A stretch of 64,000 nt of DNA from Podarcis pityusensis (Eukaryota). Location: NCBI GenBank assembly GCA_964106645.2, contig OZ067038.1. One strand, written 5' to 3'. The position numbers were made by a program, and so were the translations under genes. Position 1 is the first letter of the stretch. Each line of letters starts with the position of its first letter. The notes below the pieces were generated by a model, which saw only the letters and a program-made list of their open reading frames with translations, was not told the origin of the DNA and ran no database searches. Below are positions 991 to 17,800 of the stretch, piece after piece.

Positions 991-2122
991 AACTAAATCC
1001 CACATTTTAGAGCTGTGTGTATCACTGGTGTTTCATAACATAAATAAATATTCACAGAATATTCTAATAATCTAGTTGTAAGAGTACTGCATTACTGCAA
1101 GTAGTTTCCCCCCCCCCCCCTTCTCTAGGGTAGAATGACTATGTTACTGTACTGCCAGTTCAAACGTGTACTGCCTGGAAACATGCAAAATATACAAGAT
1201 CTTATTTTTTCAAATATAAGGCAGTCCTAGAAAAAGACACATGATTCTCTTGTGGCCTCATGTGATTGTGTTGTGGGAAGTTTGCTTATTAGCAAATATA
1301 CAGTAACTTCTGTAGTAAGCTGTTTTAAATCAAAATTAAATCAAAATTAAGAATGTAACTCCACAATGGCTTTCAACAGTCTTGGAGACTACAGTCGCAA
1401 AGCAGCTCATAAATTCTTTAAGAAGGTAGTCATAATCGCACCTGGGGAGAGCCGTCAGATTTATAAACTTGATAATTACCTAGTTTTCACTATGGGAAAC
1501 AGAATGCTGGACTGAGACCTTTTGTCTTCTCTTGCATGTTCTTATCACCCTGGCGAGAAACAATTCCTCCTTCTATTGGCATTAGGAGCAAGGAACAGCT
1601 TAAAATGAATGGATACTGCCACCACTGAAACCATATATAACTATTATTTATTACTGTTGCTTTAACAGAATGTTTTTATTAAGAGTTTCTGTGGGGACTC
1701 GCAGCAAATAATTTGTACAGATATAAATCGCCCGAAACACTCACACATCAAACAGCACATAAGGATTTTGCATAAAAAATATAGTTGGCATGTGTTATGA
1801 AATCGGTAAAACAGAGCTCCATCCTAAGGTTCTGTCTTTTGGGTTGTATCTTCCTGAAGATTCAGCTTTATGCTGGCTGGAGAGGAAATGATCTCTTCTT
1901 GTCCACTTCCATTCCACAGCCATTCTCTCAAATGGATTGGCACTCGGGAACTAACATTTACAGCCTCTTAGAACGTAAAGTTCATCAACAAACAAGGAAC
2001 TTAAAGAGCTAGGAAAATTCATGACTCACTTTAAAACGTTTAGGGAAACCTCACTGCTCTTAATGACTTCAGACCTTACAGAATGGAGACGAATGCTATC
2101 ATCCAGACTGAGGTTCTGAGCT

Positions 2123-2474
2123 TAAGGTAAAGGGACCCCTGACCATTAGGTCTAGTTGTGGCCGACTCCGGGGTTGCAGCGCTCATCTCGCTTTATTGGC
2201 CGAGGGAGCCGGCGTGCAGCTTCCGGGTCATGTGGCCAGCATGACTAAGCCGCTTCTGGTGAACCAGAGCAGCGCACGGAAACGCCATTTACCTTCCCGC
2301 CGGAGTGGTACCTATTTATCTACTTGCACTTTGACGTGCTTTCGAACTACTAGGTTGGCAGAAGCAGGGACCGAGCAACGGGAGCTCACCCCATCGCAGG
2401 GATTCGAACTGCGACCTTCTGATTGGCAAGTCCTAGGCTCTGTGGTTTAACTCACAGCGCCACCCGCGTCCCTC
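2123..2474 (-). mobile_element. Sauria-type SINE
   Basis: tRNA-like head, ACCTTT-type tail, 13-bp TSD GAGGTTCTGAGCT. Confidence 0.9.
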
Positions 2475-14800: not shown

Positions 14801-17800
14801 TACTGTAAATGGAATCTAGTAGAACATTCAAGAAAGATCAGCTACCTGACTTTTATAAGCTCTTGGTTAGGCACCGAAGCCAATTTCTAGAAGTTCTTTG
14901 AAGCAGTATAATCACCTCGGCATGACTTTAAGTATAATTTTATTGCAGTTCTCTGAAATAATAGGCATAAATGTTTGAAGCCAAAATAACTGTTTACAGT
15001 ATAACTGTGCATCTGTTCCCTGTTTCTCCATTCAAATGGCAATACACTTTTGATTAAACTATTTTATGCATCCATTTGGCTAAAAAAGTTCACAAAGGAC
15101 ACACATTTTAAACAGACTTCTGCTCACGCAACAGGACCTCCTCTTCATCTGTTCTACAGACACCTGCACATCCCCCAAATTTGTTCTGAAGCTGCTTGGG
15201 GATTCTCCAGAACAGATCTGGGGGGCTACAAGAAGAAGCAGGAGAAATTTAAAGTCCCACCAAGAGAACAGAAAAACACTAATGAGATGTTGAATTTCAC
15301 CCACAGTTAGGAATCTAACATGAAGCAAAATTAGAACAAATATCCAAACCGTGCTAGAAATTCAGAAGAAAATGTCCTTGCATGTGGTATTGCAGATTAC
15401 TTCCAGAAGACACCTTTTGGAATTACCTTGGTTGTCAGAAATGCACATAAATCCATCTCTCTGGTAGTTGGCAATTCGAGCTCGGTAAGGACAGTTTACA
15501 GGAATTTGAAGGTAGTTGGGTCCCAGACGATGTCTGTGAGTATCTGGATATGAGAAAAGACGACCCTAGAATAATATAATGGAGAGAAAAGAGTGGAGGG
15601 GGGTAAGCTTTCTTTAGATTGATGCTGACACCGTGCTGCTCCATGCTTTATGACAATATCCATTCTTCTTAAGTTGCTCCTGCTCCTAACGTCTACAGAA
15701 GGAAGAATTCTTTCTCACAGGGGCAATAAGAACATAATAGGAACTTAGGTCCAGGGTGCAGCAGGGATCACCTGAACCCTTATATCCCACCGAGATCAGC
15801 TGCAGGAGTGCCAACCAAGCCTTTGGTGTCACTGACTCAATCCTGTGGAACACTCCGCACAAAAGGTGCCCCTGATCTCTATTGGCAAACTTCTAAATGC
15901 CAGCTAAAAACTTTTCTATTCCTTCAAGTCTATGCAGGCAATTAAGAGTACATCCCCCCCACAATAGGTTCCTGATCTTTGTTTTTAACGGTTTTAACTT
16001 GCTTTCAACATTTTATGATTTTATTGTATGGTTTCATCTTATTTTTACTGTTCTAAACTGCTTTGATAAATTTTGGGGATAGAGTGGTATGCAAATATTT
16101 TTATAAATATATAATGCAAGAGCAGACCTGCTGGATCAGAAGAAAGCTTTCAGTCCAGTATTCCGCTTCCCGTCTTGGAAATTAATGTAATTTTCAAGTG
16201 TATGAATCTGACTGCTTTCCTGAAGAATTTATAAGCTGATTTGGGAATTTAGTCTCTTGAGACTGTTGAATGCCATTGTGGAGCTACATTCTCAATATTT
16301 ATTTAAAACAGCTTACAGCAGAAGTTACTATATATTCGCTAATAAGCAAACTCCCAACAGCACAGTCAAAGGTAGCCATGAGAGACTTTTGTGTTTTTGC
16401 TTGGTCTTGTTTTGTTAAATATGCTTTTACTTAAGGGGGGGGCTCAAATATTTTGTACGCTTCCAGGCTGTACATGAATTGAATTGGCAGTGCACAAACA
16501 AAGTCATTCTGACCTACTGGCAAGAATACATTACTAGAGCTAGACAGCCAGAATATTCTGCTGACATTTTCTTTACGTTATGAAACAGCAGTGGGAGACA
16601 CACAGGTCCAAAACATGTGACTCATTTGCCAAAGAAGCTCCACCCTCACTGCTGAACCATCATCAAGACTCCCTTAGCTAAAGCTTGATATATTGGAAGA
16701 ATTAAAAAAAAAAATTCATTAAGTGCTGCACACAATAAATTGACTGAACATTTTTATTGGTAAAACATACGGTAATCCTAACTAAATACATCCCCAAAGT
16801 TGCTGCTCACTGTTTTAACCTATATTAATGGGGTCAAAGAGAAACATCCAATATATTAAATTATGAATACATAAAAGTGAAAAACCCACAAATCTTCCGC
16901 TCAATATGCTTATCTGCAATGAGATCTTGTGCTGATCACATGCTCACCCTTGTTACCATGCTAGGGATTTGAACTTCCAGTAATGACCACCCACTTTTGA
17001 TCCAAGTACAGTGGTACCTTGGGTTAAGTACTTAATTCGTTCTGGAGGTCTGTTCTTAACCTGAAACTGTTCTTAACCTGAAGCACCACTTTAGCTAATA
17101 GGGCCTCCCACTGCTGTCGCGCCGCCGGAGCATGATTTCTGTTCTCATACTAAAGCAAAGTTCTTAACCTGAGGTACTATTTCTGGGTTAGCAGAGTCTG
17201 TAACCTGAAGCATATGTAACCTGAAGCGTATGTAACCCGAGGTACCACTGTATTTGGATTTTATGGGCTGGATTTAACTAATAGGTCCTGCGAGCAGAGC
17301 AGACTTCTGCAACCACAACTGGGCTCTCCCCTACCCTTTCCACACATGCTCCTGTGCCCCCCCCCCCGTTGGCTTCAAGGGGGAGGGATAAGCCCCAGAA
17401 TAGCATGTGTGATGGAGGTGAAATCAGAAATGCTCACACTCTTTAGCACTGGGCTGAATTCCTCCCTTTAAAAAAAAAAATGGAAAGGGGAAGTAAGAGA
17501 AGAGAACAAAACAAAACAAAACAAAACACACACCACACACCATGGAAAAATTGGAATAGAGTGGGGAAAACCTCCCATCAAGACATCAGCCTGGTGTTAT
17601 CTTTTCTCATTATATTTGATACTACAGGTATTAAATAGAAAATACCACCTGTATTTAAGAAAGAGTGCTCAAACTTCTTACCATCAAAGCCCACCTGCAG
17701 TTACAAACTGGTGGTACAGGGGCAGAGGGAGTCACAATGCGGTGGCAGAGTTTAGCCATTATTAACTTCCACCTTGTAATATCCTTCAACACTTCCTCTG

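What the first reader, a model, noticed from the sequence alone, without database searches (positions are those of the whole stretch)
1000..16620. Second catalase gene arranged tail-to-tail as an inverted genomic duplication
Seen: four intact + strand exons mirror CAT exons 9-12 on the - strand. Intron homology extends from ~1000-6860 to ~16620-12500, so this is a DNA-level duplication and not a retrocopy. Exon 11 differs at 16 of 108 nt, mostly third positions, while all frames and splice sites are kept. About 20 of 155 aa differ. Known: human and mouse have a single CAT gene next to ABTB2. Inference: this is a fairly old, selectively maintained second catalase, probably lineage-restricted.
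Basis: partly seen in the sequence, partly recalled or inferred. Interest (0 to 1): 0.9.

Follow-up and report, generated by a model that had tools for sequence, protein, structure and literature searches.

The report
Second lizard catalase lacking peroxisome signal
Wall lizards and their relatives carry a second, expressed catalase gene, an inverted copy next to the normal one, that has lost its peroxisome address and changed several otherwise fixed residues near the heme, some of them the same ones changed in separately duplicated anole copies.

Summary
Observation confirmed. The window is from a Podarcis wall lizard. The four + strand exons (2665-6860) are the 3' end of a complete second catalase gene (CAT-B), tail-to-tail with canonical CAT-A. 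Orthologues are in RefSeq as 508-aa 'catalase(-like)' in three Podarcis species, Lacerta and Zootoca; the same layout stands in three other assemblies, so no artefact. B keeps H75, N148, R354, Y358, D348, R203 and H305, is under purifying selection (dN/dS 0.15-0.19 among B copies, 0.47 on its stem) and gives B-specific spliced contigs in 3 of 4 RNA-like runs. Exon 13 was not copied, so B has no PTS1 and is probably cytosolic (inferred). It replaces near-invariant residues, among them charge-relay H218N. Anoles (tandem) and advanced snakes have their own duplicates; the anole copies also lack PTS1 and share D180N, N213H, Y215F and H218N, though DNA trees reject common origin (p-AU 5e-5). Local gene conversion is shown in Zootoca. 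The gene is in databases; I found no paper on it. Activity and location are untested. Earlier scan notes on this same stretch flagged PTS1 loss and conversion; nothing on other DNA.

The parts
1005..6927 (+). Part of the inverted duplication visible in the window (CAT-B intron 8 to start of intron 12); mirror of 12432-16613
   Evidence: self-blastn; alignment; 3' break about 70 nt into intron 12
2665..2803 (+). CAT-B exon 9 (residues 353-398; proximal R354 and Y358 kept; H364Y, Y370F, F391R)
3974..4104 (+). CAT-B exon 10
   Evidence: spliced contigs
5504..5611 (+). CAT-B exon 11
   Evidence: spliced contigs
6774..6860 (+). CAT-B exon 12
   Evidence: joint 5611-6774
6519..6876 (+). Gene-conversion tract (late intron 11 and exon 12), 91-95% like CAT-A against about 79% in neighbouring introns; 98.6% in Zootoca, where A and B group together
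8030..8155 (+). Probable new terminal exon of CAT-B: one Gly codon and a stop (8030-8035), AATAAA at 8150; not homologous to CAT-A exon 13; no PTS1
   Evidence: RefSeq CDS ends of P. muralis, L. agilis and Zootoca map here; acceptor, stop and AATAAA conserved; the 6860-8030 joint was NOT seen in the four runs laid
11828..11890 (-). CAT-A exon 13 coding part, ending in the PTS1-type tripeptide SNL
12504..15565 (-). CAT-A exons 9-12
18038..33418 (-). CAT-A exons 1-8: 33418-33353, 24289-24118, 21773-21663, 20936-20806, 20334-20230, 19227-19102, 18499-18308, 18190-18038
   Evidence: all AG/GT, no stops
1..1000 (-). Decayed CR1-like LINE piece inside CAT-B intron 8; it hides the continuation of the homology
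   Evidence: broken reading frames of CR1 ORF2 type, judged from memory of the family
60096..61079 (+). ORF holding ABTB2 exon 1, the conserved head-to-head neighbour of CAT-A

Best explanation
CAT-B is a working, expressed paralogue of catalase made by one inverted DNA duplication on the lacertid stem. The copy took the promoter region and exons 1-12 but broke in intron 12, so it lost exon 13 with the peroxisomal signal and now ends on a new exon (shown: structure, selection, splicing of exons 9-12, absence of PTS1). It then went through a burst of amino-acid change and has since been conserved (shown). Inferred: without PTS1, PTS2 or a signal peptide it stays in the cytosol, forms a heme tetramer and removes H2O2 there in some tissues, dividing the work with peroxisomal CAT-A; the changes at the proximal charge relay (H218N), on the NADPH side (N213H, Y215F) and at Y370F retune redox behaviour or resistance to inactivation without removing catalysis. 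The same changes in anole copies are convergent.
For: Full 508-aa orthologues in five lacertid species and the same tail-to-tail layout in three other assemblies. H75, N148, R354, Y358, D348, R203, S217, H305 kept; R203 plus H305 is the published rule for NADPH binding (PMC9687031). dN/dS 0.15-0.19 among B orthologues (Fisher p 1e-7 or less), 0.10 among A, 0.47 (0.30-0.88) on the B stem. Contigs joining exons 9-10-11-12 with 0-2 differences per exon from B, where A differs by 11-16, in runs X5 and X7, and both first joints in X1; none in X14, which shows A only. No exon 13 remnant; none of 372 AG sites downstream gives a PTS1-like end, no PTS2 or hydrophobic leader. Lacertid A+B clade 100/99, also on synonymous sites alone; B with anole copies rejected, p-AU 5e-5; intron distance A-B 0.25 against 0.07 between genera. 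Cytosolic catalase is reported to be the more protective pool against H2O2 (PMC7659713).
Against: No activity, heme or location data. The joint from exon 12 to the 8030 exon was not seen although B contigs were deep in two runs, so the true 3' end rests on annotation. B changes residues that are fixed in about 180-190 other animal catalase records (K38S, E60M, H63N, E71D, P162M/I, H218N, D335A), and H218 belongs to the R354-H218-D348 charge relay (PMC4696219), so function may have shifted further than tuning. Catalase is a tetramer, so B could enter peroxisomes with A subunits (general knowledge; yeast catalase A has an internal signal, PMC3798809). At protein level a clade of B plus anole copies is not rejected (p-AU 0.27). 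RNA status of the runs is the tool's guess and tissues are not named.
Confidence: 0.62

Rival explanations
1. CAT-B is a heme protein whose main job is no longer fast H2O2 dismutation: a slower catalase turned peroxidase or oxidase for another substrate, or a subunit that modulates CAT-A in mixed tetramers.
For: At least seven changes at near-invariant sites on one branch, next to the distal pocket (E71D beside R72, P162 beside F161), in the charge relay (H218N) and at Y370; stem dN/dS 0.47, then renewed constraint. Anole 523-aa copies carry H218N together with further heme-side changes such as R66Q and P359R/Q.
Against: All catalytic and heme-ligand residues are kept; Y215F with N213H occurs in the only catalase of turtles and in a bat, Y370F and D335A/S in invertebrate catalases, and Asn at the 218 position is the plant state (from memory), so each change alone is compatible with catalase activity.
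Confidence: 0.2
2. The lacertid, anole and snake extra copies descend from one old squamate duplication; conversion later made synonymous sites and introns look lineage-specific while selection kept the B-type residues.
For: Shared derived states D180N, H209F, N213H, Y215F, H218N, K228N, A381T with anole copies and D180N, S167T with snake copies; protein test does not reject; conversion does occur here (P. muralis A carries the B-type H364Y).
Against: Whole gene plus 11 kb upstream is collinear at an even 70-85%; at unchanged codons of exon 6 itself B is no closer to anole copies than to other squamates; orientation is inverted in lacertids and tandem in anoles; DNA trees reject every grouping of the duplicates (p-AU 5e-5 to 6e-44); gecko has one copy between ABTB2 and an ETS gene.
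Confidence: 0.1
3. CAT-B is an ordinary redundant catalase that still reaches peroxisomes by riding in with CAT-A subunits and is kept mainly for dosage.
For: 88% identical to CAT-A; promoter CpG island kept; co-expressed with A in some runs.
Against: Dosage alone does not explain the burst of changes at fixed sites and their later conservation; expression differs strongly between runs.
Confidence: 0.06
4. Decaying pseudogene or assembly artefact.
For: Missing last exon; raised dN/dS on the stem.
Against: Open frame in five species, dN/dS 0.15-0.19, spliced contigs, same layout in four independent assemblies, 25% intron divergence from CAT-A.
Confidence: 0.02

Closest known systems
Vertebrate monofunctional clade-3 small-subunit catalase (CAT; bovine PDB 3J7B/1TGU, Pfam PF00199 + PF06628)
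   Same: Same domains, exon structure, catalytic His and Asn, proximal Tyr and Arg, NADPH-rule residues; E 1e-300 to bovine catalase.
   Different: No exon 13, no PTS1, 508 instead of 527 aa; H218N, Y215F, N213H, Y370F, E60M, H63N, E71D, P162M/I, D335A.
RefSeq 'catalase-like' XP_028584112.2 (P. muralis), XP_053244117.1 (P. raffonei), CAI5763605.1 (P. lilfordi), XP_033005793.1 (L. agilis), XP_034977129.2 (Z. vivipara)
   Same: These are the orthologues of the + strand gene: 97-100% over exons 9-12, same locus layout.
   Different: Automatic annotations only; no paper found on origin, PTS1 loss or residue changes.
Anolis tandem catalase array (523-aa and 512-aa copies, e.g. XP_060620894.2, XP_062823934.1)
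   Same: Extra CAT copies at the same locus, no PTS1, share N213H and Y215F (all) and D180N and H218N (523-aa copies).
   Different: Tandem not inverted, keep a diverged exon 13, group with iguanian CAT on DNA trees, more degenerate at the heme (R66Q, P359R/Q, D360N/E).
Second catalases of amphibians (Xenopus cat gene 2 type, caecilian and newt catalase-like) and of advanced snakes (XP_070787298.1, XP_070617484.1)
   Same: Extra tetrapod catalases, most without a PTS1-type end; frog copies share H364Y.
   Different: Separate duplications; keep H218.
Yeast Cta1/Ctt1 pair (peroxisomal and cytosolic catalase)
   Same: Works like it if the inference holds: one peroxisomal, one cytosolic isoenzyme.
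   Different: Unrelated, far older duplication; location is proven in yeast and only inferred here.

Membership tests
Monofunctional heme catalase, clade 3 | Catalase core and catalase-related domains above Pfam cut-offs | tested here: met
   PF00199 643 bits, PF06628 68.5 bits for the P. muralis orthologue; window exons 9 and 11 pass on their own
Monofunctional heme catalase, clade 3 | Distal His75 and Asn148 | tested here: met
   in all 11 lacertid B records; these exons lie left of the window, so tested on orthologues
Monofunctional heme catalase, clade 3 | Proximal Tyr358 with Arg354 | tested here: met
   window exon 9
Monofunctional heme catalase, clade 3 | Arg203 and His/Gln305 for NADPH binding; small residue at 217 | tested here: met
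   rule from PMC9687031
Vertebrate CAT | Charge relay Arg354-His218-Asp348 | tested here: not met
   His218 is Asn in all B records; Asn in 1 of 195 other animal records; relay per PMC4696219
Vertebrate CAT | C-terminal PTS1 from exon 13 | tested here: not met
Monofunctional heme catalase, clade 3 | Catalase fold | tested here: inconclusive
   monomer model mean pLDDT 60, barrel and helical domain well formed, arm and wrapping loop low as expected without the tetramer; sequence match to solved catalases E 1e-300
Monofunctional heme catalase, clade 3 | Heme-bound tetramer with catalatic activity | not testable with these tools
   needs protein work
Processed (retro) copy | No introns | tested here: not met
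   introns present and homologous
Pseudogene | Frame breaks, dN/dS near 1, no spliced RNA | tested here: not met

The most novel reading that the evidence does not exclude
Lacertids and anoles each evolved, from separate duplications, the same kind of non-peroxisomal catalase by parallel loss of PTS1 and parallel change of the proximal charge relay and NADPH-side residues (D180N, N213H, Y215F, H218N), giving a functionally distinct cytosolic enzyme class in lizards with altered chemistry, such as more peroxidatic activity or less NADPH-dependent protection.
Probability: 0.3. Interest if true: 0.75.

Novelty: new variant of a known kind. Interest (0 to 1): 0.5.

Why it matters
Amniote catalase is treated as a single-copy, peroxisomal, nearly invariant enzyme. 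A conserved PTS1-less paralogue gives a natural test of two open points: whether a dedicated cytosolic catalase pool is favoured, and what the His218 relay and the Tyr215/Tyr370 electron paths contribute, since nature has replaced them and selection has kept the result, twice for His218. It also matters in practice: lacertids are common models in oxidative-stress ecophysiology and ecotoxicology, where 'catalase activity' and cat qPCR mix two genes with different expression, and converted tracts (exon 12) cannot tell them apart.

Tried and rejected
Assembly artefact, retrocopy, pseudogene and partial (exon 9-12 only) copy: rejected. Search for an exon 13 remnant on the + strand: score within shuffles. 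Search for any downstream acceptor giving a PTS1-like end: none of 372. Loss of the promoter CpG island as the cause of patchy expression: not supported, B keeps it. Raised conservation of the 8030 exon as proof of function: weak, the whole spacer is about as conserved. Homology of the spacer to outgroup 3' flanks, to show where the new exon came from: only exon 13 and the 3' UTR align. Ten paper searches gave nothing on a lizard catalase duplication; the library lacks most subscription papers. The AlphaFold monomer was too uncertain to read residue contacts, so no fold search was run. Loci of amphisbaenian, skink, monitor and turtle were not fetched (look-ups spent); Rhineura is represented by one protein only.

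Full report
Observation. A self-comparison of the window shows a chain of inverted matches from 1005-6927 to 16613-12432, introns included, broken only by young SINE and LINE insertions. On the + strand lie four exons with AG/GT ends and open frames (2665-2803, 3974-4104, 5504-5611, 6774-6860) that mirror exons 9-12 of a complete 13-exon catalase gene on the - strand (exon 1 at 33418, exon 13 ending at 11828 in SNL-stop). The window has no N. ABTB2 exon 1 lies head-to-head at about 60100. I call the - strand gene CAT-A and the + strand gene CAT-B.

What it is. Exon 9 was searched by reference; a full-length catalase from that search led to lizard records. CAT-B exons match 508-aa proteins annotated as catalase or catalase-like in Podarcis muralis, P. 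lilfordi, P. raffonei, Lacerta agilis and Zootoca vivipara at 94-100%, while CAT-A matches their 527-aa catalase. The window is 93-96% identical to P. muralis DNA, so it is a Podarcis genome. In P. muralis, L. agilis and Zootoca the 508-aa gene is complete and lies tail-to-tail with the 527-aa gene 3-4 kb away. Four independent assemblies and 25% intron divergence exclude an assembly slip. Against those loci, CAT-A of the window shows inverted collinear homology through every intron, exon 1 and at least 11 kb upstream, at 70-85%. So the left edge at about 1000 is only a CR1-like insertion in intron 8, and the true 3' break is about 70 nt into intron 12.

Origin and age. On exons 2-12, lacertid A and B form one clade (100/99), also on synonymous third positions alone; grouping B with the anole extra copies is rejected (p-AU 5e-5; exons 2-6 alone 0.001). 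Intron distance A-B is 0.25, against 0.06-0.08 between Podarcis, Lacerta and Zootoca: about 3.4 times older than that radiation, very roughly 50-100 million years on calibrations from memory. Gecko has one CAT between ABTB2 and an ETS-family gene; Elgaria, Phrynosoma and Thamnophis show no second copy within 10 kb. Extra copies exist elsewhere: a tandem array in Anolis (canonical, two 523-aa, one 512-aa), a second gene in advanced snakes and second genes in amphibians. DNA trees reject a common origin of the squamate duplicates.

Selection and conversion. Window A against B over exons 9-12: dN/dS 0.27 (0.14-0.51). Over exons 2-12: 0.15-0.19 among B orthologues, 0.10 between A orthologues, 0.47 (0.30-0.88) on the B stem, 0.02 on the lacertid stem before duplication (counting method, not a codon likelihood model). 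That is a burst of change after duplication and renewed constraint since. Late intron 11 and exon 12 are 91-95% alike between paralogues, and in Zootoca 98.6% with A and B as sisters (100/100), which shows local conversion; P. muralis A carries the B-type H364Y.

Expression. No run is on record as RNA; four RNA-like runs from four studies were laid on 2600-8599. X5 and X7 each hold one contig that joins exons 9, 10, 11 and 12 at the predicted sites with 0-2 differences per exon from B, where A differs by 11-16; X1 shows the first two joints; X14 shows only the A-type exon 12-13 joint. Contig depths for B were about 340, 4, about 1200-1400 and none: not a measure of level, but they suggest strong differences between samples. 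The joint from exon 12 to the annotated last exon at 8030 was not seen, and that exon was almost uncovered; the tool drops some records, so this neither confirms nor excludes it.

The end of the protein. No trace of exon 13 follows B exon 12. The annotated CDS ends of three other lacertids map to an acceptor at 8030 that adds one Gly and a stop, with AATAAA at 8150; acceptor and stop are conserved in all four genomes. Whichever end is used, none of 372 AG sites in 6880-12400 gives a PTS1-like tripeptide, read-through into intron 12 does not either, and there is no PTS2 or hydrophobic leader. CAT-A exon 13 is on the other strand and cannot be used. Cytosolic location is the inference; import with A subunits is not excluded.

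The residues (human numbering; exons 1-8 read from orthologues). Kept: H75, N148, R354, Y358, D348, R72, R112, R365, S217, R203, H305; the last two satisfy the published rule for NADPH binding (PMC9687031). Changed at sites nearly fixed among about 195 other animal records: K38S, E60M, H63N, E71D, P162M/I, D180N, N213H, Y215F, H218N, D335A, H364Y, Y370F. H218 is part of the R354-H218-D348 charge relay (PMC4696219); Y215 lines the NADPH pocket (PMC10213376), and a Phe/Tyr on the path from that pocket governs tyrosyl radical formation in Proteus catalase (PMC9687031; that it is this very position, and the radical role of Y370, are from memory). H218N is in all lacertid B records, in 11 of 15 anole duplicate records, and in 1 of 195 others (an insect); a search aimed at that segment added one more insect. 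Anole copies also lack PTS1. At unchanged codons of exon 6, B is not closer to the anole copies than to other squamates, so the sharing is best read as convergence, though a protein-only test cannot reject kinship (p-AU 0.27). N213H with Y215F is also the state of the single catalase of turtles, so that pair is tolerated.

How it most likely works. Shown: whole-gene inverted copy without exon 13, spliced, conserved, PTS1-less, catalytic residues intact. Inferred (0.62): a cytosolic, tissue-biased heme catalase with retuned redox properties that shares the work with peroxisomal CAT-A; cytosolic catalase is reported to protect better against H2O2 (PMC7659713). Rivals: shifted chemistry or a modulating subunit (0.2), old squamate paralogue masked by conversion (0.1), redundant dosage copy (0.06), pseudogene or artefact (0.02).

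Novelty. The gene is in public annotation; ten literature searches found no description of it. It is a member of the clade-3 catalases by domain and catalytic residues, but fails two features of vertebrate CAT (PTS1, His218). New variant of a known kind; interest 0.5, higher if altered chemistry and convergence with anoles are shown.

No contig was taken for human; one human catalase protein record (P0253) came back in protein searches, stood in alignment A1 and was left out of later analyses. Trees left out the turtle, bird and amphibian rows except where named, and exons 1 and 13.

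Noticed in passing
window 35626-39903 (-): Young Copia-type LTR retrotransposon: 551-bp LTRs with 3 differences, 5-bp target duplication, gag and protease/integrase ORFs, no RT ORF of 100 aa or more; absent at the same site in P. muralis. It sits 2 kb upstream of CAT-A exon 1.
   Followed up: partly
window 59192-59215 (-); L005-L009 at 10001: Alternative first coding exon of CAT-A (8 codons, MSR...) next to the ABTB2 promoter, about 26 kb upstream of the usual exon 1; annotated at the same place in P. 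muralis, gecko, Elgaria, Thamnophis and Anolis. Whether CAT-B copied it is unknown.
   Followed up: partly
L009:24820-24885: In the Anolis sagrei assembly the usual exon 1 of canonical CAT lies on the opposite strand to the rest of the gene: a real inversion or an assembly error.
   Followed up: no
L002, L004, L009: Anolis carries a tandem array of at least four catalase genes; the 523-aa copies have dN/dS about 0.47, weak promoter CpG content and changes at R66, P359, D360.
   Followed up: partly
L012; proteins P0287, P0291, P0378: Advanced snakes have a second catalase (D180N, R189C, P359R) that groups with snake CAT; its orientation could not be read.
   Followed up: partly
L003:25668-25778; L010:25097: A tandem second copy of exon 3 in CAT-B intron 3 of Lacerta agilis (AG/GT kept, 91% like) and a decayed one in Zootoca.
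   Followed up: no
window 3974: G399D at the exon 9/10 junction of CAT-B in this genome, shared with P. raffonei but not P. muralis or P. lilfordi.
   Followed up: no
window 42123-43403 (+): 426-aa ORF of an L2-type LINE reverse transcriptase 3' part, with shorter copies at 6128-6519, 51832-52217 and 57362-57600.
   Followed up: no
proteins P0213, P0357, P0303: Turtles and the bat Saccopteryx carry N213H with Y215F in their ordinary catalase, so the two sites seem to change together.
   Followed up: no
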